From: Lytechinus pictus
Lineage: Eukaryota
Direction of reading: 5' to 3'
Assembly: GCF_037042905.1 (NCBI RefSeq)
Contig: NC_087263.1
Span: 3,100,001-3,164,000 of the forward strand
DNA length: 64,000 nt
Made by a program: the position numbers and the translations under genes. The notes under the pieces were generated by a model that was given only the letters and a program-made list of their open reading frames with translations, was not told where the DNA came from and did not search any database. Shown here in pieces: positions 1 through 44,799 of the stretch; within the stretch, counting starts at the first letter, position 1; the number at the start of each line of letters is the position of its first letter.

Positions 1-468
1 AAATATGTGGTCGGCTTGTTAAATTCGTTCCCAAACAGCTCTCTCTGACATGCTTAGAGACTGCTGAACACTATCATATTTTGCTTTATATATATATTCT
101 CATTTAATGGGGGGGGGGGGGGTACAACAAGAACAGGAAGCCATTACTCTCTGGAGTTGAATGTGTTCACTCCTTCCTCAGAAATATATTCTTGGAAAGG
201 CTTTGTCAAGATTTGTTATTGCCCTTATTTGAAGCCAATTTTAGCCTATAGGTCTACAATATTAAACAGTCGTATGATTTTATGAGCCTACCCCTCTGAA
301 ATATTAATTTCAATATATCAATTTTATGGGAATTCTAACGCCAGTTAGAATTGCCTCAAGCGATAGGTAAGTAAACCTCATTCAAGATGAAATGCACAAT
401 ACCAAATGTCAAAGCCACCGGAGTACACACATGAATATATTTTTCTTTTCTTATTTGTCATGTTACAG

Positions 469-694
469 AGACCCCTAGCAGGAAATCCTGAATCCCCCAT
501 GATGATGAATACTGGCGTAGATTCGGGCGTCCCTCCGCCCCAGACGGGCCAGCCGGATCCAGACTCACTAAAAATGTTCGTCGGACAGATCCCCAAGGCA
601 TACGAAGAAGATAAACTAAGGGAAATGTTCTCAGAGTTTGGTCCTGTATATGAACTCAACGTTCTCAGGGATAAGAAAACGGGAGAAAGTAAAG
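469..694 (+). CDS. CELF2: CELF1/2-like RNA-binding protein, first coding exon in window (N-terminus and first part of RRM1); likely start ATG 499
   Basis: Acceptor ttgtcatgttacag|AG at 468/469, donor AAAG|gtgagc at 694/695. Translation MMMNTGVDSGVPPPQTGQPDPDSLKMFVGQIPKAYEEDKLREMFSEFGPVYELNVLRDKKTGESK matches CELF1/2 QPDPDAIKMFVGQIP (RNP2). The symbol denotes the CELF1/2 co-ortholog. Confidence 0.95.
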
Positions 695-1357
695 GTGAGC
701 GCCGACAACCAGGCAAGATATGCACCCTTAACTTGCTAGAGGGTGCCATTGAAAATATAATATGGCATGAACTTTTGGTATGAACCAAAGTAGGAGAAAT
801 CTATTCCTGTTCAGAAATTATTTATTTGTACCCTGCAACTGACAATGCCTTTTCATTATTTTTTTTCAGAATTGTAAAAGGACTTTTTTAATCATGTTAA
901 ATATGTGCAGGTGTCCAAAAGCATTTGGCTTCTTTTATATCTTATGAAGGAATGATGATGATAATTAATTATTATAATGGTAATTTATTAATTGATTTGA
1001 GATGTTTTACTGGAATTCATAATGACAAAAATCATGTTAATGGTTAATTTTCTTTTAGTACAGGTGTATTTCATGATATTGGGATGAAATTCATTTTTAA
1101 TACACTTTTCCGTTAGTCATAGTGAAACTGAACGAAGAAAATAATTTATATCTGGGCGTGAGTTGATATTGGCAACAGACTTTGATCATCTCTAAAAAAA
1201 ATCTTTGACAGTTGTACATGATAAGGATCATTTTAGTTACATTTGTGCAATAAGTACAGACTATGATAATCTATCCTGTATGCAAATTAAGTCATTTATT
1301 CTTGTGGCATTTTAGACTTTGGTGTTGAATTAGTGTTTGTTTTCTTTTTACACCCAG

Positions 1358-25607: not shown

Positions 25608-27662
25608 GATGGGTTCTTGATAAGGATGGGCGACACCCAGCAGGATGACGACGGGCGAACCATCTTGGACGAGAGTGTCCTCCTGGCTAAATGTATGTTT
25701 TTTCAAGTAATTGAATTATTAGACACAGGGATGCTGATAGGGTCACTTTGGTAGTAGACTGCAAGAGCTTGGGTTGATATGTAATACCTGCTCTGGTAGT
25801 CTCTTGATGAAGACATACACTTGTAAGATGGAATCAGGGGTTGGGAAGATTAAACTTTTGGATATGGCTATCTATCCTATTTTTGTTTATATGCCATATT
25901 CCGATTTGTATCAAGCATAAGTTTTTTTGTTTTTTTTTCTTTATTTTTATTTTTTTTCTTTATTTTTTTCTTTATTTATTTATTATTATTATTATTTTTT
26001 TTTTGGGGGGGGGGGGGGGGCTTGTAAGAAAGAATGGTGGGATAGAATTATTTCTTGTGGTCAGGGCTATTTTCCTTGTTTCGTTCATTCAAAATTTGTG
26101 TTGGAAAAAGCTCAAATATTAAAGTTTTTTTAAATCTCGTTGGCTAAATTCATTGCCTTTCAGTCGTATGTATTATCTTCTTTTTAAGATGAAATCCTAT
26201 TAATGTGAGCATGTATTAAAAATGATAAAACGTAAGGATTGGAGAAGGTTATATCTCTTTAAAATCGGTGCAATTAGTAGTTATTGAGCTCTTGTAAAAT
26301 ACTGACTTTGGCAGATTTCTGCGGACTGTGAGAGATTGGATATAAATCAAATCACTTTCAACTTATCTAGTACTAAAATTCTCATTTGTTATTTCTGTAA
26401 CGCAAACCTTTGTGATTGATTCCAATCATACAGTTGACTTGTAGAGTTAATTGCAATTGAAAGCGATGAGTATTCCACAACTTTAAAATAAATGTACTTG
26501 TAAATGTTAGATATGATGGTACCAGCAGAATTATGTAGTTATTGAAATACTAGTATGAGAAGGAAAATCACACATCTGCCGTGAATTGATAAAGAGATCT
26601 TAATTAAAGTGGTTAATTCTAATTTTAATACACAAACACTTTTCACTACTTATGAATAAAATGTGTGTTGTGTTTTCTCTAAACATGATTTATTCAACAT
26701 TCTTTACAATTCACATAAAGTGACATTTTAGGTAAATGCTATGTAGCTATAAAGGTTGATGTGTGTTGCCTTGCGTAAAATATACCTAGTTTCATGAGTG
26801 AACCATTAGAATAGAAAACAGAATAATATAGGAACTATGATGTGATCAACGCCTTACTTAAGGATGCTTTGAAAAGAAAAATTGTTTAATTCATGTCACA
26901 CAAAGCAAGAGAATGGCAAAGATGATTGCAAAGGATGTTTAATCATTGCAAGTGATCTTCTCTGATAGCCTCAGGCTAAGGTCTGGAGTCAAAGACTAAC
27001 TATCCAGTGCATGTTGTAGGGGTATCCATATCACTGACATTAATAATTCATCGTGGGTTTATAGCCGGCATCTTCCGAATACCCTTACTCAAGTGATCAC
27101 AATCTACATTGATTTACAAATCTGATTCTCGGTCTGAATTTCAGATAGCCAAGGTCCGGGCTCTGTTCACACTTGCTCATTGGTGGAATCAAATCATGTA
27201 TTATGTACTGATTGTATTAGTGCCCTGTGTGAAATGAATGCATTTTGATTGTGCAATTGTTATTGGGTCTGAGAATTCTTAAAAATAACCAGAAAATAGT
27301 TATTTCAGCATAGTGTCAAATGACACCTTTTGGCTTGACTACAGCTGGTGATGATGTTGATGACTGTTTGATGATAGCAATGTCAATCGTTCTCATAGTG
27401 CAATTTATCTGGAAAATATGCAAATCTGCTGATTTTCACAATATGTCACACAGACATAGGTTTTGATTACCGATTTTGAAGGTCTTTTTCTTTAATTGAG
27501 TATTTATTATATCTAATGCAGCAGTCTTGTAAATTTACTTCATTGTGTGAATGAGGTCATAGTTTGAATTGTAGATGGCCATGGTTAAGTGTTATCAGGT
27601 AGAAACCATCAACAGTGTACCATCCACACATTCTCAGAAGGCTGTTTCATGGCATCCTTTAA

Positions 27663-27734
27663 CCTATTCCATTTGGAATCCAGCTTATCCCTGTACAAAG
27701 CCTATGAGAATCACAGATTTCAGCGATTAGTGGG
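27663..27734 (-). mobile_element. 72-bp piggyBac-like mini element, inverted relative to 47328-47399
   Basis: ttaa...cctgtacaaagcctatgagaa...agtggg-ttga; same length and core as the reverse complement of 47328-47399. Confidence 0.6.
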
Positions 27735-30700
27735 TTGATTCGGAATGACCACCCTTCTAGCAGCGAACCGTTATCTTACGTTGTATCTATTTCCCTGCCT
27801 ACGATGCGGAGATGAAGCGATTCGTTTTTTTCCTGCTTGTTTACTGCTCTTTTAACCCCTTTACGATATTTGGTAAACTAGTCCGTACATTTGGATTAGT
27901 CTTGAGAGCTAGACTCATACCAGATGTTAAAGGAAGGTAATACAGAACATTGTTTATTGATGAACTTTTCTGATGTTTGTTAAAACGTCCAGTTTATATT
28001 CTTTTGTTATAACAGTAATTAAGTCTCAAATATATTTTAATTCAATTTGTTCTATTTTGGTGTTCTTCTGGTTAAAATGATTAACTGTAGTTCATCTGCC
28101 CCAAATCATGTATTTCCTACGCTGCGGGAGTGGGAGAACATGTTTAGTTTTCAAGCAGGGTACAATACTATGTTCATATCTACTGCTGATTAGTCTGATT
28201 ATGAGACCCTTCTTTTCTTGATATCTTTTTCCTCTCCCATTTACTATGGCTTAGATTTTCTTGTATTTCTCTCAGCTTTTCCTCTTTACCTCTCCTGTAT
28301 ATGCTTCCAAATGCTCACCCCCCCCCTTATGATCTGTCCTTATTTTCTCTTCAGGTGCCATCTTCCTATCATCTTTCCTCTCACCCACCCAGTATACACA
28401 CTTAACTGTCTCTTGAGCTTGTACCAACACAGTCATAGTCGCCTACCACCGCTCCCCCACCCCTCCTCCTCCCCTTCCTTCCCCCACCCCACCCCCTACT
28501 TAGACTCATTTTCCTTTGCAAAACACAAACGCATGTGAAAAAATAGATGTAGCGTACATTACAGATGAAATGCCTTGTCCAAGGAATCAATCCCATGACC
28601 CACACATTCAAAGTTGAATCGTTTGACCTCGCAGCTGCAACATCTCTATATCTCTATCGCCTTCCTGCACGCGTGCATCTGCATGCTATACCCACACATG
28701 CACTCGAAACAGGTCCCAAATAACGTGCCGTAGTTGCTACACTATTACTCTCATCTAAATATAGACCGGTTGCTACTCGCTCAAATGGAAGTATATTTTA
28801 TCTCCATCGTTAGCAACCCGTTTGAGATGCCTTTCTCTCTGATAAAATATGATATTCTAAAAATAGACCCTTCTCCCTCGTAAAAAAACAGCTCTCTTAT
28901 CCGAGTTGAAGCATTATGTGGAGGAAAGTAATGATCATGGCTGTTGAGAGGATCTAAGTTCATAAAATTCTATGAAAATCAAAAGAAATAGTGATTGAAA
29001 GGTCAATAAAATGACTATGAATATACAGTAGCTAATAAAAAATGTTTTATTGCTTTTATATTGTAGTGGCAATGTAAATGAATTGTGTCTACTTATTTTC
29101 CTCAGATATCTTGAACTTAAAAAAAAAGACATTTGAATCAGAAGAGTTAGTGTTTAAAAACACTTCACCTATGTTTGTTTTGAGCTCAATTGGCATTCAC
29201 TTTAGTTTTCCAGTTTCAAACAGTGTATACTTGACAGAAATAATCCAAATACTAGTAGATGCAATGTCAAAGGTTTTTTACCATATCTTGGATTACTAGA
29301 CTATCTAATTCCATGTTCATTTCCCCCTTCCTGTTTAGTATCTGATTGCCTGTGCATTTCCACCTGCGAGTGCACAGGACTGCATGGCTTTAGATTCATA
29401 TTCCTGATATTCCGCAGCTCTCAAAAGTATGGACATTCCTGGCAAATAACGTCCAAAAAAGATTACCATGTACTCCACATTCCGTCAACAATCTGATCAA
29501 AAATGCATGGCAGCGTGTCTTAGCTTCGTTATTTGGTCGGGGAGATCCTCCCGATCACAGTTCCAATCAGTGGAAGGGCAAATAATGGCAGACATGTAGA
29601 ATCCCCTGTGGGTCGTGATGATATGGTACGCTTTCCGCTGCCACCAGGAAAGAAACCCCTTATGAAAGTTCACCTAAGTTAAAGCTCTATCTGCAGGTAC
29701 ATGTAGGCCTTCCCCCTTACCCAGTTCTTCTGTCAATCCTTTCAGTCATTCCAATCTGTCTTTTTACTTATCTTCCAAAGTCAGCATATCCTCTTTAATA
29801 AATGATCCCCTTTGGGTTCGCCTTTCCTTGTGTTTCATCACCAATAAAGATAATTTGTCTTCTCTGCCCTGTTTGTATTTTGTCGTATGTTCATCAACCC
29901 CTTCATCTTTTCCACTGATCAGTCTTTCGTTTTCTCCTGTATTGATTGCATCTTACATACACATAAAAAAATATTGTTTAAATTTTTTAGACAATGCTGT
30001 TTGCTATATGAACCATACAGTAGAAGCTTAAATCGTAGACAAGGTTTAATGTTTAATATTTAATTTTCAATAAATAATTCATGGTTGTTCATATAGTAAA
30101 CAGCGTTGTATAATATTTTATACAGGGTTTTTAATATGTATATAATCACAATTGTTCCTTTTTCCATCCCCCTTTTTTATATCCATATCCCCTCCCCCTG
30201 TCCCCATCTCATTCCCCTCCCCCTTCCTCCTTTTCTACTAATTTTCTCCATTTCCATCTTCATCTTTATTTTCATTGCAATCTTCCAATATCTTCATCTT
30301 GACATCTCTTTCTCCTCTTTAACCTCCATTTTCTTCCCCTTCCCTCTTTCTAATCCTCCTTTTTCTTCAAATATTCTTCAAAATATTCTTAATCTTCATC
30401 TTCCTTTGTCTTTTCCATTACCGACTTCAACCATCTCTTTCATTTTTTCCCTTCTCAACTCTTCTTTGACCCACTCCGTTTTCTTTCCCCCCTCCCCTCA
30501 CTGCCTATTACTCCATCACCATCTTCTCCATCTTCCCCACATCTTCATCTTGCCATCTGGTATACATCTCCCATGATCATCACACTGCCTTCATCCCAGC
30601 TACCGGAGGATGATGGGAGATGCGCGCCGCTCCGAGCACTCCCCACACACTCCAGCACGAGACACGTTGCCACTGTTAACGCCACACGCTTGCGATCACG

Positions 30701-31446: not shown

Positions 31447-31735
31447 NNNNNNNNNNNNNNNNNNNNNNNNNNNNNNNNNNNNNNNNNNNNNNNNNNNNNN
31501 NNNNNNNNNNNNNNNNNNNNNNNNNNNNNNNNNNNNNNNNNNNNNNNNNNNNNNNNNNNNNNNNNNNNNNNNNNNNNNNNNNNNNNNNNNNNNNNNNNNN
31601 NNNNNNNNNNNNNNNNNNNNNNNNNNNNNNNNNNNNNNNNNNNNNNNNNNNNNNNNNNNNNNNNNNNNNNNNNNNNNNNNNNNNNNNNNNNNNNNNNNNN
31701 NNNNNNNNNNNNNNNNNNNNNNNNNNNNNNNNNNN
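31447..31735. other. Assembly gap (289 N)
   Basis: Run of n, preceded by (GAT)n-like sequence. Confidence 1.
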
Positions 31736-40159: not shown

Positions 40160-40468
40160 GCCGAGTCGTGGTCTAGTGGTTCTGACTCTCGCCTTTCAAA
40201 CAGAGGGTTGCGGGTTTGAATCCTAGCCATGGCATGTTTCCTTAGCAAGAAATTTAACTACACTGTGCTTCACTCGGCCGAGGTGAGATGAATGGGTACC
40301 CGTTAGGAAGAAATTCCTCGAAAGTTCAAGCGCCCGATCAAGGTAGCCCTGCTAAATCCGGGATAATTATATAACATTATCATGTTAAGCAGGACCCGCT
40401 GGTAGAACATTTTTCAGAGCCTAAGTGGCTTCCCTGGGTAAAATGTTATTATCATTATTATTATTATT
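40160..40468 (+). mobile_element. tRNA-derived SINE, near full length
   Basis: A-box gtggtctagtgg, B-box ggtttgaatcc, conserved core aggtgagatgaatgggtacc, (ATT)n tail. Confidence 0.85.
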
Positions 40469-40499
40469 AAAATACTCCTGTCTATCTTTGTTTTTACAG

Positions 40500-40694
40500 G
40501 GTTGTACGTCAAAGTTGGTAGTTAAGTTTGCAGACACGCAGAAAGAGAAAGAACAGAAGAAGTTACAGCAAATGGCACAACAAATGTGCTACAACAATCT
40601 ATTACAAATGGCATGTTTAGGTGGTGGTATGAATAACCAACAACAACAACAACAACAACAACAAGGTTCAGGTCTCAACAATCCATACTTATTT
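40500..40694 (+). CDS. CELF2: CELF1/2-like exon 6 (end of RRM2 GCTSKLVVKFADTQKEKEQK, start of linker with polyQ)
   Basis: tttttacag|GGT acceptor and TTT|gtaagt donor; 195 nt, phase 0-0; VVKFADTQK is the CELF1/2 form. Confidence 0.96.
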
Positions 40695-41504
40695 GTAAGT
40701 GTTGACCCATGATAAAAAGGAGAAATGGAGAAAAATTCACAGAAAGAGTAGAGTTCGGCTCTGTATTTTTCCTTCATTTCTCCTTTGTGTTTTGTTATCT
40801 TTTATTTCACTTTATCTCAGATTGCCGGGGAGACTTGGATAATATATATTGCGTGTTTTTTTTTAATAGTGACAGGTAGTAGTGACAGGTCATTAAGGGG
40901 TGAGAAGGATTGATGAATAGGAACAGTTTGTCAAATCTAACCAGTGATATTTATAGATAGTCCATGTTAAGCTTATAAGGCCTCGATTTGTGAGTAAAAA
41001 TCGTCTTTTTAAAGGCAAAAATCACACATTTGCAAAAGTAAAAGCGAAAAAATCAAAGGTAAACTAAAATTTATAAGTCGTCACATTATATGAGATCTTT
41101 GAATAATATTGATAGTAAAAGTCATGATTTAAAATGTATGTTCTTAGCTCATTCAAAATGAGCATGCCTGATCATGCACCCTGACTTTGCTTCTTTTGAG
41201 GGGATGTCCCTTAAAATTTGGCTCCATTGAGGGGAATCCCCAAATCTAATATTAGGGGATTTCCCAAGCATTGACCAATGAGGATCAAGCTTTCAAGCAT
41301 ATCATCCTCATCGGCCAATACAAATTATGTTACTGCAACTGTAGGACTGTGCATGAATGATTCCTGTGTGTGCATGCAAAGCCAAAGACAGAATCAAAAT
41401 GTCACATGTTCATCAGAGTATTTTGGTTTTATTCCTATCCCCCTTTTTGTCTTTTGTTGTGCCCCCCTCCCCCCATGTGATCAAAGCAGAATGCATTCTT
41501 GCAG

Positions 41505-41595
41505 TTAGCGCAACAAGCAGCAGCAGCTGGTGGTGGAGGCGGAACAGGGGGTAACATGGGAAATGTGTCAAACCTTGCCAATCTACAACTACCAG
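41505..41595 (+). CDS. CELF2: CELF1/2-like exon 7 (linker: LAQQAAAAGGGGGTGGNMGNVSNLANLQLP); alternative in-frame acceptor at 41490
   Basis: ttcttgcag|TTA acceptor and CCAG|gtaaga donor; 91 nt, phase 0 to 1; resembles CELF1 LLQQTASSG...NL. Confidence 0.88.
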
Positions 41596-41846
41596 GTAAG
41601 ATAGTACGAAATAGTACCCTTCATTGAGGGCATTAGTAGGAATTATATGCACAATGTACCTTTGGAACAGTTTTTACATGCTAAAGGGATAGTGGAGGAT
41701 GTTTGGGTTGTTTTCTAAGGTAAATGTTGTTGGTAATTTTTCTAATGCCTGAGTAAAATGATCGTAATCACAATAGGTAAGGGATTAGGACCCTGTCTTG
41801 CAAATAATTGCAATTAACTGTGATGCCCAAAAGCAAAAACATCCTG

Positions 41847-42028
41847 GCGGGTGTTTCATAAAGCTGTTCATAAGTTAAGAGCGACTTTAAGAACAACTGG
41901 CGATCCTTTCTTATGGTAAATGATATTCACTATCAATGTTCATTGGTGATTATTTAGCGTGTAAGAAAGGTTCACCAGTCGTTCTTAAAGTCGCTCTTTA
42001 CTTACGAACAGCTTTATGAAACGGCCCC
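41847..42028. mobile_element. Palindromic Harbinger-type MITE; second copy at 56367-56549, degenerate copy at about 36503-36670
   Basis: gtttcataaagctgttc.taagttaagagcgactttaagaac / gttcttaaagtcgctctt..cttacgaacagctttatgaaac; CTG target duplication. Confidence 0.9.
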
Positions 42029-42743
42029 CTGATATTCATCCGATCAGATATGGACTTGTATTTGTTTGCCTTAAAAAATAGTTACTGATTGTAAATAATG
42101 CCCCTTTGTTATACCTAGTTCCCACTTCCTTACAATTTAAATGGAGATCTTAATTGTGTAGTTATCGTAGTGATCGTGTCTGATCAGTCGTACTGATCGC
42201 AGAAGTATGAATGGTTCAACAATTCTCAGGATAAGTTACGGAAGGTAAATTGTGGGAACAAGACATTAACAAAAAAAAGTAGCATGTGATTGGTTTAAAA
42301 AGAAATGTTTATAGATAATCTTTGAATGGATATAAATATTGTAGATATTAGTGTTGCTGACTTTCCATCGTCATAAATTATTATCAAACCAATCACAATC
42401 TCGGCATATCAGGGCCCCACCTTACAAATTTTTACGCTTGATTCGATCAACCTCGGTTATATGGAAATTCATCAATGTCATATTTTTGTTCTTTAGGAAA
42501 TTTGCACAATATGCATTGTACACAAAGAGAAGCATACCAAATTTTAAAGAAAATGATGAATGTATCAATTTACATCATATCAAGAAAACATTTTGAACAA
42601 ATATGCAGTTTAGATGGTGACTTTGCTGGCTTTCTATAACTGAAGTTCATTGGATCTTAATTGCAACTCTTTATAAGAAGGCCCTGTGCCCTGAGATCAT
42701 TCGTGAAGTTTTAAGTTAAGTTGTTAAGTTGCTACAAGTTTAA

Positions 42744-43341
42744 AGGTCAAGTCCACCCCAGAAAATTGTTGATTTGAATAAATAGAGAAATTTTAGACTA
42801 GCAAAATGCTGAAAATTTCATCAAAATCGGATTATAAAATAAGAAAGTTATGACATTTTAATGTTTCGCTTACTTTTCACAAAACAGTTATATGCACAAC
42901 TCGGCAACATGCAAATGAGAGTCGATTATGTCCCTCACTCACTATTTCTTTTTTTATTGTTTAAATTATACAATATTTCAATTTTTACAGATTTGACAAT
43001 AAGGACCAACTTGATGAACCATATAGTATTAAACAATGCTAATTCCACATGTTCAGGGAGGAATTAATCGTTGTTTCACTTGACAATGAGGAGAAAATTA
43101 AGGATATTTCATATTTCATATAATAAAATACAAAAGAAATAGTGAGTGGATGACGTCATCAGTCGCCTCATTTGCATACCAACCAGGATATGCATATAAC
43201 TGTTTTGTGAAAATAAGTGAAACTTTGAAATATCATAACTTTCTTATTTTACATCGGATTTTGATGAAATTTTCAGTGTTATGCTTGTTGGATTTTTCTC
43301 TTTTTATTAAAATCAACTTTTTGTTGGGGTGGACTTGTCCT
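42744..43341. mobile_element. TTAA-flanked MITE (Kolobok-like)
   Basis: TTAA-aggtcaagtccacccca...tggggtggacttgtcct-ttga, with further internal inverted matches (gaaaatttcatcaaaatc, aagaaagttatga). Confidence 0.85.
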
Positions 43342-44077
43342 TTGATGAAATCCCTATATTTGATTGGCCAAGAAGGCATTTGTGTGTCAGCAATTAGTTT
43401 TGAAGAAGGGCCCTTCATTTGTATCTGATTTAGTACATGTATGAATACTTTCACAAACTATTTTGTCTCTTGAGCATTTTCTAAGCTTTCTGTTCATTGC
43501 ACTTTCGTCACCAATCATCAGATGTTGGTTGGAAAACATCCTGCCATTCTTTGGCCTTTGATAACCTTATCATTTGCACCTCATTGACCTTTGATGCATT
43601 GACCCTTGAAATCCTTAATCATTTGCACTTTCCACCTATCCAGTTACCACTACTATCTTTTTTTAAATTTAATCACTGAAAAATACCTCATTTCTACCAA
43701 TCTAGGTTAAATCTTTGCCTCTTGACAGCTTTTGACCTTTGACATATTTTAGCCATGACCTTTGACAACATTGACCTTTAACTCTTACCTCCCCAATGAT
43801 CGTTAACTATTGACATTTAGAAAGATGCTTGCTTGTCCAATATCTTTTGCCCATTGATGTCATGAACAATTTACCATTGACATTTCAAACCTTTGATAGC
43901 CTTTGTTATTGAGCTTTGACATTTGTAACCCTTTACACTTTGCAATTTTGAATCCCTTTGACCTCTCATCTTTGGTATCCCTATCCTTCCACCCTTTGCA
44001 CCTCTCTCGTGACCAACCACCATCTCTTCTGTTTTTAATATTCATGCCAGGCCATGAATATTCATCTTCCCCTGTAG

Positions 44078-44245
44078 GTCAAACGGCGGCATTGACGATG
44101 CCCCAACTAGCGGCATTAGCGTCGGCGGTCAACCAGCAGCAGAACAGTACGGGTGGCCAGAGCCAGAATGCGTTAGCACAGAGCCAAGCGTTACTAGCAG
44201 CGGCACAAGGGAACAGCATTATGGGGGTCACACCCGGATCAACAG
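44078..44245 (+). CDS. CELF2: CELF1/2-like exon 8 (linker: GQTAALTMPQLAALASAVNQQQNSTGGQSQNALAQSQALLAAAQGNSIMGVTPGST); alternative acceptor at 44051
   Basis: cctgtag|GT acceptor and ACAG|gttggt donor; 168 nt, phase 1-1; GC-rich island; LAALA motif as in the CELF1/2 linker. Confidence 0.88.
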
Positions 44246-44799
44246 GTTGGTATAAACAGGGTCCATTATAAATAGTAGACACATAAGCAAGTGGTCTACC
44301 TTTAAACATGTTTCTTATAGGCACCCAATGTACTCAGGAAAAATGGCTGCCTTGGGCAGGTTGGCGTATCCAGTGAGGTTGCCCAACTCAATGGTGTCCT
44401 TTGTGGTAGACAATATGTATGCAACTATCTCTTTGGATTTAGCCTTGGAGATAAATGTCACTGTATTTGACGAGAGAAATCAAAATAGTGTACCTTTGAG
44501 GCAGGTAGTATCTAGTCTTGGGGTGGGTTTTTTTCATCACTTTTTTTTAAAGCATCACTGGAAGGGAGTTCCACAAAGTAGTTTACGGTGGTGAACTATA
44601 GTATTATGAAGCTTCATCATTCAAGCATTCATTTGTTTTGTATTTTCATCTTTGTTGCCTGTTCCTGTTTCTTCATCTTTCATCAATTCTCAGAATTCTC
44701 GCATGTATATATAAACATTTTATTCTTGCATCATTTACAACCATTTGTACTCCATATATTTATTCCTGCATGTATACATGTATTTATGTATCAATATGT

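What the first reader, a model, noticed from the sequence alone, without database searches (positions are those of the whole stretch)
41484..41504. Alternative acceptor adding NAFLQ at the position of vertebrate CELF1 +/-LYLQ
Seen: aagCAG|AATGCATTCTTGCAG|TTAGCG. The upstream CAG (41487-89, itself in a NAGNAG) is the one preceded by the long pyrimidine tract and adds 15 nt in frame, giving PYLF-NAFLQ-LAQQ. Established: human CELF1 has isoforms with or without LYLQ in the context QYLA-LYLQ-LLQQ. Inference: a deuterostome-wide conserved alternative 3' splice event.
Basis: partly seen in the sequence, partly recalled or inferred. Interest (0 to 1): 0.7.

Follow-up and report, generated by a model that had tools for sequence, protein, structure and literature searches.

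The report
Sea urchin CELF tandem NAGNAG acceptor
In this sea-urchin CELF RNA-binding-protein gene the five residues NAFLQ are always kept in the data examined. The only alternative splicing seen here is an ordinary 3-nt NAGNAG choice that adds or drops one glutamine, so the proposed counterpart of the vertebrate CELF1 +/-LYLQ switch is not supported.

Summary
The sequence is as described: exon 6 ends NPYLF at 40694, and the intron ends AAG|CAG|AATGCATTCTTGCAG|TTAGCG. The window's exons match Lytechinus pictus CELF RefSeq isoforms exactly.

RNA-seq junctions from 40694 (three raw runs, two Lytechinus species):
- To 41487 (exon starts Q-NAFLQ): 88 reads.
- To 41490 (NAFLQ): 34 reads.
- To 41505 (NAFLQ skipped): none listed.

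None of 102 annotated echinoid isoforms from five species lacks [N/S]AFLQ. All differ only by +/-Q. The real event is therefore a NAGNAG tandem acceptor, conserved from Diadema to Lytechinus and already present in RefSeq models.

The intron position and phase do match vertebrate-type CELF1 (QYLA|gt...cag|CTCTATTTACAG|TTGCTG = LYLQ|LLQQ). They also match a hemichordate and a decapod.

The alternative event is not deuterostome-wide:
- The hemichordate Glandiceps encodes ALFQ with Q = CAA, so it has no second AG.
- All 17 hemichordate isoforms fetched keep ALFQ.

Decapod crustaceans do show +/-AYLQ isoforms, with the same cag|GCGTACTTACAG|TTACTT architecture. The xYLQ alternative acceptor may therefore be older than deuterostomes, or recurrent.

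The parts
40500..40694 (+). CELF exon 6 (end of RRM2 and start of the linker), phase 0 to phase 0. It ends in NPYLF and contains a (CAA)9 poly-Q run at about 40640-40666.
   Evidence: Translation. RNA depth and a contig piece covering 40500-40694. Exact match to L. pictus isoforms.
40695..41486 (+). Intron of 792 nt (795 nt with the second acceptor), donor GTAAGT.
   Evidence: Joints 40694->41487 and 40694->41490, GT..AG, with no depth inside the intron.
41419..41484 (+). AG-free, pyrimidine-rich tract in front of the acceptors. The last ~150 nt of the intron are conserved with S. purpuratus.
   Evidence: AG positions and pyrimidine content. Alignment with S. purpuratus.
41484..41489 (+). AAGCAG NAGNAG tandem acceptor. 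The exon starts at 41487 (major form, adds Q) or at 41490 (minor form).
   Evidence: One search counts for 41487 vs 41490: X19 30 vs 9, X20 48 vs 20, X22 10 vs 5, and the X1 contig uses 41487. RefSeq isoforms carry QNAFLQ or NAFLQ.
41490..41504 (+). Codons for NAFLQ. They are included in every transcript seen and correspond to vertebrate LYLQ, hemichordate ALFQ and decapod AYLQ.
41503..41504 (+). Third in-frame AG (the CAG of Gln). This is the proposed downstream acceptor, which would start the exon at 41505. No use was detected.
   Evidence: No 40694->41505 joint was listed. No isoform reads PYLF-LAQQ.
41487..41595 (+). CELF exon 7 (109 or 106 nt). It ends in phase 1 with the donor GTAAGA.
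   Evidence: Joint 41591->44047 'cut +4', which equals 41595->44051, with 32 and 44 reads and one contig. Translation.
44051..44078 (+). Start of exon 8. Acceptor 44051 is used in the reads. A second annotated acceptor at 44078 drops the nine residues HEYSSSPVG.
   Evidence: for the junction at 44051. Isoforms LQLPGHEYSSSPVGQTA vs LQLPGQTA.

Best explanation
The window carries the single-copy CELF (CUGBP/Elav-like, Bruno-like) gene of a Lytechinus sea urchin. Its exons are identical to L. pictus RefSeq isoforms.

The intron after the NPYLF codons ends in a tandem AAG|CAG acceptor behind a 66-nt AG-free pyrimidine tract. The spliceosome takes the first AG (exon start 41487) in roughly three of four transcripts and the AG 3 nt further on (41490) in the rest. 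This gives proteins with or without one glutamine in front of NAFLQ.

The NAFLQ codons are constitutive exon sequence. Their final CAG lies 15-18 nt downstream of the first usable AG, behind a purine-containing stretch. It is read as a Gln codon and not as a splice site.

Shown:
- The junction counts.
- The annotated isoforms of five echinoid species.
- The homology of the intron position.

Inferred:
- The choice between the two AGs is the usual near-stochastic competition at NAGNAG sites.
- The distal AG loses because the first AG after the branch point and pyrimidine tract is preferred.
For: Junction evidence:
- 40694->41487: 30, 48 and 10 reads in X19, X20 and X22, plus one contig in X1.
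- 40694->41490: 9, 20 and 5 reads.
- No 40694->41505 row, at a listing threshold of 3 reads and 1 %.
- The libraries are stranded, and their direction fits RNA from the + strand.

Annotated isoforms: 102 echinoid isoform sequences from L. pictus, L. variegatus, S. purpuratus, Diadema setosum and D. antillarum.
- 57 carry Q[N/S]AFLQ.
- 31 carry [N/S]AFLQ without the Q.
- 14... (see note below on the S. purpuratus set).
- None lacks the peptide.

Breakdown: QNAFLQ 38, NAFLQ 20, QSAFLQ 16, SAFLQ 9, and 19 S. purpuratus isoforms with an extra microexon followed by (Q)NAFLQ.

Other support:
- AG map and pyrimidine content.
- The 29 nt TCAAAGCAGAATGCATTCTTGCAGTTAGC are identical in S. purpuratus.
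- The genome has only one such locus.
- Window exons are 100 % identical to L. pictus isoform X1 where L. variegatus differs.
Against: - Only three raw RNA runs, of unknown tissue or stage, and one contig set could be laid. Each raw run was sampled at 6-25 %.
- The joints table was truncated ('163 more are not shown'), so a very weakly supported 41505 joint could be hidden. Use below about 5 % is not excluded.
- The 15 nt of NAFLQ are perfectly conserved between Lytechinus and Strongylocentrotus while neighbouring codons carry synonymous changes. This could hint at a constraint beyond coding.
- Gnomon isoform sets are models, not proof that a form is absent.
Confidence: 0.85

Rival explanations
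1. Acceptors 41490 and 41505 form a regulated alternative 3' splice pair that includes or skips NAFLQ. It would be homologous to vertebrate CELF1 +/-LYLQ and conserved across deuterostomes, but used only in tissues or stages not sampled here.
For: - Homologous intron position and phase.
- An in-frame CAG is retained in L. pictus and S. purpuratus within a perfectly conserved 29-nt block.
- Vertebrate-type CELF1 and a decapod share the same xYLQ-CAG architecture.
- Decapods have isoforms with and without AYLQ.
- A named human LYLQ isoform exists (PMC4448682).
Against: - No junction to 41505 was listed among about 122 junction reads in two species.
- None of 102 echinoid isoform models and none of 17 hemichordate models lacks the peptide.
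- The hemichordate Glandiceps has CAA, so it cannot splice there.
- The distal AG has the poorest pyrimidine context, 0.45.
Confidence: 0.07
2. The +/-Q NAGNAG is a regulated, functionally selected switch in the CELF linker and not splicing noise. Its persistence from Diadema to Lytechinus would reflect selection for both isoforms.
For: - Both forms are annotated in all three echinoid genera examined, Lytechinus, Strongylocentrotus and Diadema.
- The AAGCAG motif is identical in S. purpuratus.
- The last 150 nt of the intron are conserved and hold two UGCAUG motifs at 41351 and 41372.
Against: - The ratio is similar, roughly 2-3 to 1, in all three runs. That is what passive competition gives.
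- A single Gln in a low-complexity linker is unlikely to matter much.
- NAGNAG motifs persist passively wherever both products are tolerated.
- No tissue comparison was possible.
Confidence: 0.2
3. The apparent 41487/41490 heterogeneity is an alignment or allelic artefact and not alternative splicing.
For: The two joints differ by only 3 nt, and short-read aligners can shift junctions.
Against: - The joints table gives 'both = 0', so there is no ambiguity of placement.
- Sides of 51-69 nt, many distinct starts (8-32), and the same pattern in two species.
- No indel polymorphism was listed at this place.
- RefSeq independently models both forms in five species.
Confidence: 0.03

Closest known systems
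NAGNAG tandem acceptor alternative splicing (described as an evolutionarily widespread class in PMC2699507 and PMC3095350, abstracts seen)
   Same: - Two AGs 3 nt apart at the intron end.
- Both are used.
- The result is a one-codon in-frame difference (+/-Gln).
- The ratio is similar across samples.
   Different: - The upstream, major site is an AAG.
- The motif sits directly in front of a peptide that is itself alternatively included in other phyla.
Vertebrate CELF1 (CUGBP1) +/-LYLQ isoforms ('human CELF1 LYLQ isoform', PMC4448682). The gene architecture was seen in vertebrate-type CELF1 contigs L003-L005.
   Same: - Same intron position after (P)QYL[A/F], phase 0.
- The next exon opens with a short hydrophobic xxLQ peptide ending in CAG.
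- That peptide is followed by L[L/A]QQ.
   Different: - In the urchin the peptide is 5 residues (NAFLQ), not 4.
- It is preceded by an extra NAGNAG.
- The internal CAG is not used as an acceptor in any data examined.
Decapod crustacean CELF +/-AYLQ isoforms (RefSeq models of Penaeus, Macrobrachium, Palaemon and others; genomic sequence of Halocaridina rubra, L010)
   Same: Homologous junction: PQYLA | AYLQ | LLQQ, with cag|GCGTACTTACAG|TTACTTCAGCAG. This is almost letter for letter the vertebrate arrangement.
   Different: Both acceptors appear in the annotated decapod isoforms (20 with AYLQ, 31 without), whereas echinoid and hemichordate isoforms always keep the peptide.

Membership tests
CELF / Bruno-like RNA-binding proteins | RRM domains: two N-terminal and one C-terminal. 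| tested here: met
   Pfam RRM_1 hits the window's first coding exon (E 7.7e-9). It also hits the matching L. pictus isoform X1 with two stretches (E 1.7e-33). RRM3 lies beyond the window's end. The RefSeq models start at exon 3, and RRM1 is annotated as a separate 123-aa product.
CELF / Bruno-like RNA-binding proteins | Closest relatives are CELF proteins, and a long low-complexity 'divergent' linker lies between RRM2 and RRM3. | tested here: met
   All named hits are 'CUGBP Elav-like family member' proteins. The linker is rich in Q, A and G.
NAGNAG tandem acceptor | The motif NAGNAG lies at the intron-exon border. | tested here: met
   AAGCAG at 41484-41489.
NAGNAG tandem acceptor | Both AGs are used in mature mRNA. 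| tested here: met
   88 vs 34 junction reads in three runs, with unambiguous placement. Both forms appear in RefSeq isoforms.
CELF1-type +/-xYLQ alternative 3' splice site | The intron is at the homologous codon and in the same phase. | tested here: met
   The donor follows QYLA or PYLF in phase 0, and the acceptor precedes LYLQ, ALFQ, AYLQ or (Q)NAFLQ. This holds in vertebrate-type contigs, Glandiceps, Halocaridina and the window.
CELF1-type +/-xYLQ alternative 3' splice site | A second in-frame AG closes the short peptide. | tested here: met
   TTG CAG at 41499-41504. The same is true in S. purpuratus. It is not true in Glandiceps, which has CAA.
CELF1-type +/-xYLQ alternative 3' splice site | Both acceptors are used, giving isoforms with and without the peptide. 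| tested here: not met
   No 40694->41505 junction was listed. None of 102 echinoid isoforms lacks the peptide.

The most novel reading that the evidence does not exclude
The short xYLQ-type peptide at the start of this CELF linker exon, with its closing CAG acting as a second acceptor, could be an alternative-splicing module dating back to the bilaterian ancestor. It is active today in vertebrate CELF1 (LYLQ) and in decapods (AYLQ), with near-identical nucleotide architecture. On this reading the sea urchin's perfectly conserved distal CAG at 41503-4 is a still-functional relic, used only in a cell type or stage that the three runs did not sample.
Probability: 0.08. Interest if true: 0.55.

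Novelty: new member of a known kind. Interest (0 to 1): 0.25.

Why it matters
For the window itself it matters little. The event is a routine one-codon NAGNAG choice that RefSeq models already contain, and the proposed deep conservation of a CELF1 isoform switch does not hold in sea urchins or hemichordates.

The comparative by-product is of modest interest to people who study the evolution of alternative splicing:
- The same intron, and a homologous 4-5-residue peptide, exist from crustaceans to vertebrates.
- The peptide is alternatively included in vertebrates and decapods through a 12-nt tandem acceptor.
- It is fixed as constitutive in ambulacrarians.

This makes a clean test case for ancestral versus recurrent origin of a small alternative 3' splice event inside a splicing regulator.

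Tried and rejected
- RNA structure: a hairpin around the 12-nt palindrome AGAATGCATTCT (41488-41499) that might hide the distal AG was rejected. The fold of 41470-41530 is no better than shuffles (z = +1.16).
- S. purpuratus microexon: a 45-nt microexon (PDVVNAQAMKEQTIA) lies in the orthologous S. purpuratus intron. I searched for it in this window and found no match.
- Paralogue: a second CELF locus with a different junction was sought in the same genome. Only this locus matched.
- Vertebrate full-length isoforms: three word-indexed protein searches returned echinoids, hemichordates, arthropods, molluscs and rotifers, but no full-length vertebrate CELF1. The vertebrate isoform without LYLQ therefore rests on the literature name only. 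The vertebrate gene architecture came from short unnamed contigs. Contigs L001 and L002 were too short to reach the next exon.
- Missing genomic DNA: none could be fetched for Diadema, Macrobrachium, Scylla or Palaemon because the gene range or file was too large. Two look-ups found no record.
- Not done: no splice-site scoring model (MaxEnt type) was available, so only pyrimidine content and the AG map were used. Only one read-laying run was allowed, so no tissue or stage comparison was possible.

Full report
**Observation.**
- Exon 6 of a plus-strand gene runs 40500-40694 and ends AAT CCA TAC TTA TTT (NPYLF), in front of GTAAGT.
- The intron ends in a pyrimidine-rich stretch with no AG between 41419 and 41484.
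- After that come AAG (41484-86), CAG (41487-89), AATGCATTCTTGCAG (41490-41504) and TTAGCG.
- Exon starts at 41487, 41490 or 41505 all keep the frame. They give PYLF-QNAFLQ-LAQQ, PYLF-NAFLQ-LAQQ or PYLF-LAQQ.
- The pyrimidine share of the 20 nt upstream falls from 0.75 to 0.60 to 0.45 for the three sites.

**The gene.**
- The window encodes RRM1 (Pfam RRM_1), RRM2 and the long Q/A/G-rich linker of a CELF (CUGBP/Elav-like) protein.
- All named relatives are CELF proteins.
- The exons are 100 % identical to Lytechinus pictus RefSeq isoform X1, including the Q9 run and two residues where L. variegatus differs. The window is therefore L. pictus or something indistinguishable from it.
- The genome holds only this one locus for the exon 6-7 region.

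**Which acceptors are used.** I laid two stranded raw RNA runs of the window's species (X19, X20), one raw run of the sister species (X22) and one contig set (X1) on 40300-44400.
- The RNA comes from the plus strand, and the intron interior has no depth.

| Junction from 40694 | X19 | X20 | X22 | X1 contig |
|---|---|---|---|---|
| to 41487 (QNAFLQ) | 30 | 48 | 10 | used |
| to 41490 (NAFLQ) | 9 | 20 | 5 | not seen |
| to 41505 (peptide skipped) | none listed | none listed | none listed | none listed |

- Placement of both listed joints is unambiguous, with many distinct read starts.
- Rows were listed from 3 reads and 1 % upward.
- Exon 7 ends at 41595 and joins 44051 (32 and 44 reads).
- The alternative event is therefore the AAG|CAG NAGNAG, at about 72:28 in favour of the upstream AG. 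NAFLQ is included in every junction seen.
- Caveats: the runs were sampled at 6-25 %, their tissues are unknown, and the joints table was truncated. Use of 41505 below roughly 5 % is not excluded.

**Annotated isoforms.** Protein searches and cluster listings gave 102 echinoid CELF isoform sequences from L. pictus, L. variegatus, S. purpuratus, Diadema setosum and D. antillarum.

| Sequence after NPYLF | Isoforms |
|---|---|
| QNAFLQ | 38 |
| NAFLQ | 20 |
| QSAFLQ | 16 |
| SAFLQ | 9 |
| S. purpuratus 15-residue microexon, then (Q)NAFLQ | 19 |
| peptide absent | 0 |

- The +/-Q pair occurs in every genus, so the NAGNAG is conserved across echinoids.
- In S. purpuratus the DNA TCAAAGCAGAATGCATTCTTGCAGTTAGC is identical to the window over 29 nt.

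**Is the intron position homologous to the vertebrate one?** Yes.
- Vertebrates: three vertebrate-type CELF1 genomic contigs of unnamed origin (L003-L005) show ...GPQYLA|GTGAGT, a short intron, and then ...cttcag|CTC TAT TTA CAG|TTG CTG CAG CAG (LYLQ|LLQQ). Many intron read-through fragments, some named as teleost, end in PQYLA followed by V.
- Hemichordate: Glandiceps talaboti (L006) has CCT CAG TAC TTA GCG|GTAAGA and ...tctccag|GCA TTA TTT CAA TTA ATG CAA CAA. Two of its isoforms join a different upstream exon directly to ALFQ, which confirms the exon border.
- Decapod: Halocaridina rubra (L010) has PQYLA|GTGAGT and ...attcag|GCG TAC TTA CAG|TTA CTT CAG CAG.

**Is the alternative event conserved?** Not in Ambulacraria.
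- In Glandiceps the Gln codon of ALFQ is CAA, so no second AG exists.
- All 17 hemichordate isoforms fetched (Glandiceps, Ptychodera, Saccoglossus) keep ALFQ.
- Echinoids keep a CAG but do not splice at it.
- Outside deuterostomes, decapod RefSeq isoforms come both with AYLQ (20) and without it (31). Horseshoe crabs show PQYLS followed by LLQQ, by Q alone or by nothing.
- For vertebrates I have only the literature name 'human CELF1 LYLQ isoform' (PMC4448682). I did not retrieve the isoform lacking LYLQ.

**Mechanism.**
- Shown: two AGs 3 nt apart are both used, and the third AG is not.
- Inferred: after the branch point and the 66-nt AG-free tract, the first AG is taken preferentially, and the AG 3 nt downstream competes, as at other NAGNAG sites.
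- Inferred: the AG 15-18 nt further on, behind AGAATGCA, has no advantage and is read as a Gln codon.
- An RNA hairpin explanation was tested and rejected.

**Comparison with what is known, and novelty.** NAGNAG tandem acceptors are a widespread, well-described class (PMC2699507, PMC3095350).
- This one is already implicit in RefSeq models, so it is a new member of a known kind and is ordinary.
- The finding fails the defining test of a CELF1-type +/-peptide switch, which is use of both acceptors.
- The comparative pattern is the only mildly novel point: alternative in vertebrates and decapods, constitutive in urchins and hemichordates. It needs junction-level data in more phyla.

**Verdict.** The proposed alternative NAFLQ inclusion and its deuterostome-wide conservation are not supported. 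Interest is low.

Noticed in passing
window 44051-44078: Exon 8 has two acceptors 27 nt apart. Reads of the window's species use 44051 (32 and 44 reads, giving LQLPGHEYSSSPVGQTA). Some RefSeq isoforms of L. pictus, L. variegatus and Diadema use 44078 (LQLPGQTA).
   Followed up: partly
L007:42110-42154 (S. purpuratus orthologue); window 40695-41486: S. purpuratus has a 45-nt microexon (PDVVNAQAMKEQTIA, ttttag|...|GTAAGT) inside the orthologous intron, included in most of its annotated isoforms. No counterpart is detectable in this window by blastn.
   Followed up: partly
window 41339-41486: The last ~150 nt of the intron are about as conserved with S. purpuratus as the exons. They hold two UGCAUG (Rbfox-type) motifs at 41351 and 41372. 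The first is kept in S. purpuratus, and the second is kept as GCAUG. This may be a splicing-regulatory block for exon 7.
   Followed up: no
window 40640-40666: A (CAA)9 poly-Gln run. L. pictus proteins have Q9, L. variegatus proteins Q6, and S. purpuratus has a different G- and Q-rich version. The linker varies in length between close species.
   Followed up: no
window 454-696 and 1357-1479: The RRM1 exons of this gene are annotated in RefSeq as a separate 123-aa product that reads through into the intron. The main CELF models start at MRHPIQ (exon 3, about 33033). The gene model seems split across the ~31-kb intron that holds the N gap at 31447-31735.
   Followed up: partly
window 44115: A>G in about half of the reads of both same-species runs (51/90 and 53/105) and in all reads of the sister species. 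It is a synonymous GCA>GCG change. Most likely it is a heterozygous SNP and not editing.
   Followed up: no
window 41807-42080 and 42629-43450: Interspersed repeats inside the exon 7-8 intron attract very many reads on both strands, with many variants and loose ends. These are multi-copy elements transcribed elsewhere in the genome.
   Followed up: no
L006:~27100-27990 (Glandiceps talaboti): The hemichordate gene has two tandem versions of the exon 6 equivalent (GCTSPIQVRFAETSKERDQ... and GCSSPLVVKFADTPKEKEA...). Isoform models use either both or only the first, which suggests a duplicated, possibly mutually exclusive exon.
   Followed up: no
L010:22886-36310 (Halocaridina rubra) and decapod isoforms: Decapods have an optional cassette exon (RERERGRESVSSANNLVALGPQYLA) that repeats the GPQYLA ending of the preceding exon. 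The same donor context therefore occurs twice in front of the AYLQ exon.
   Followed up: no
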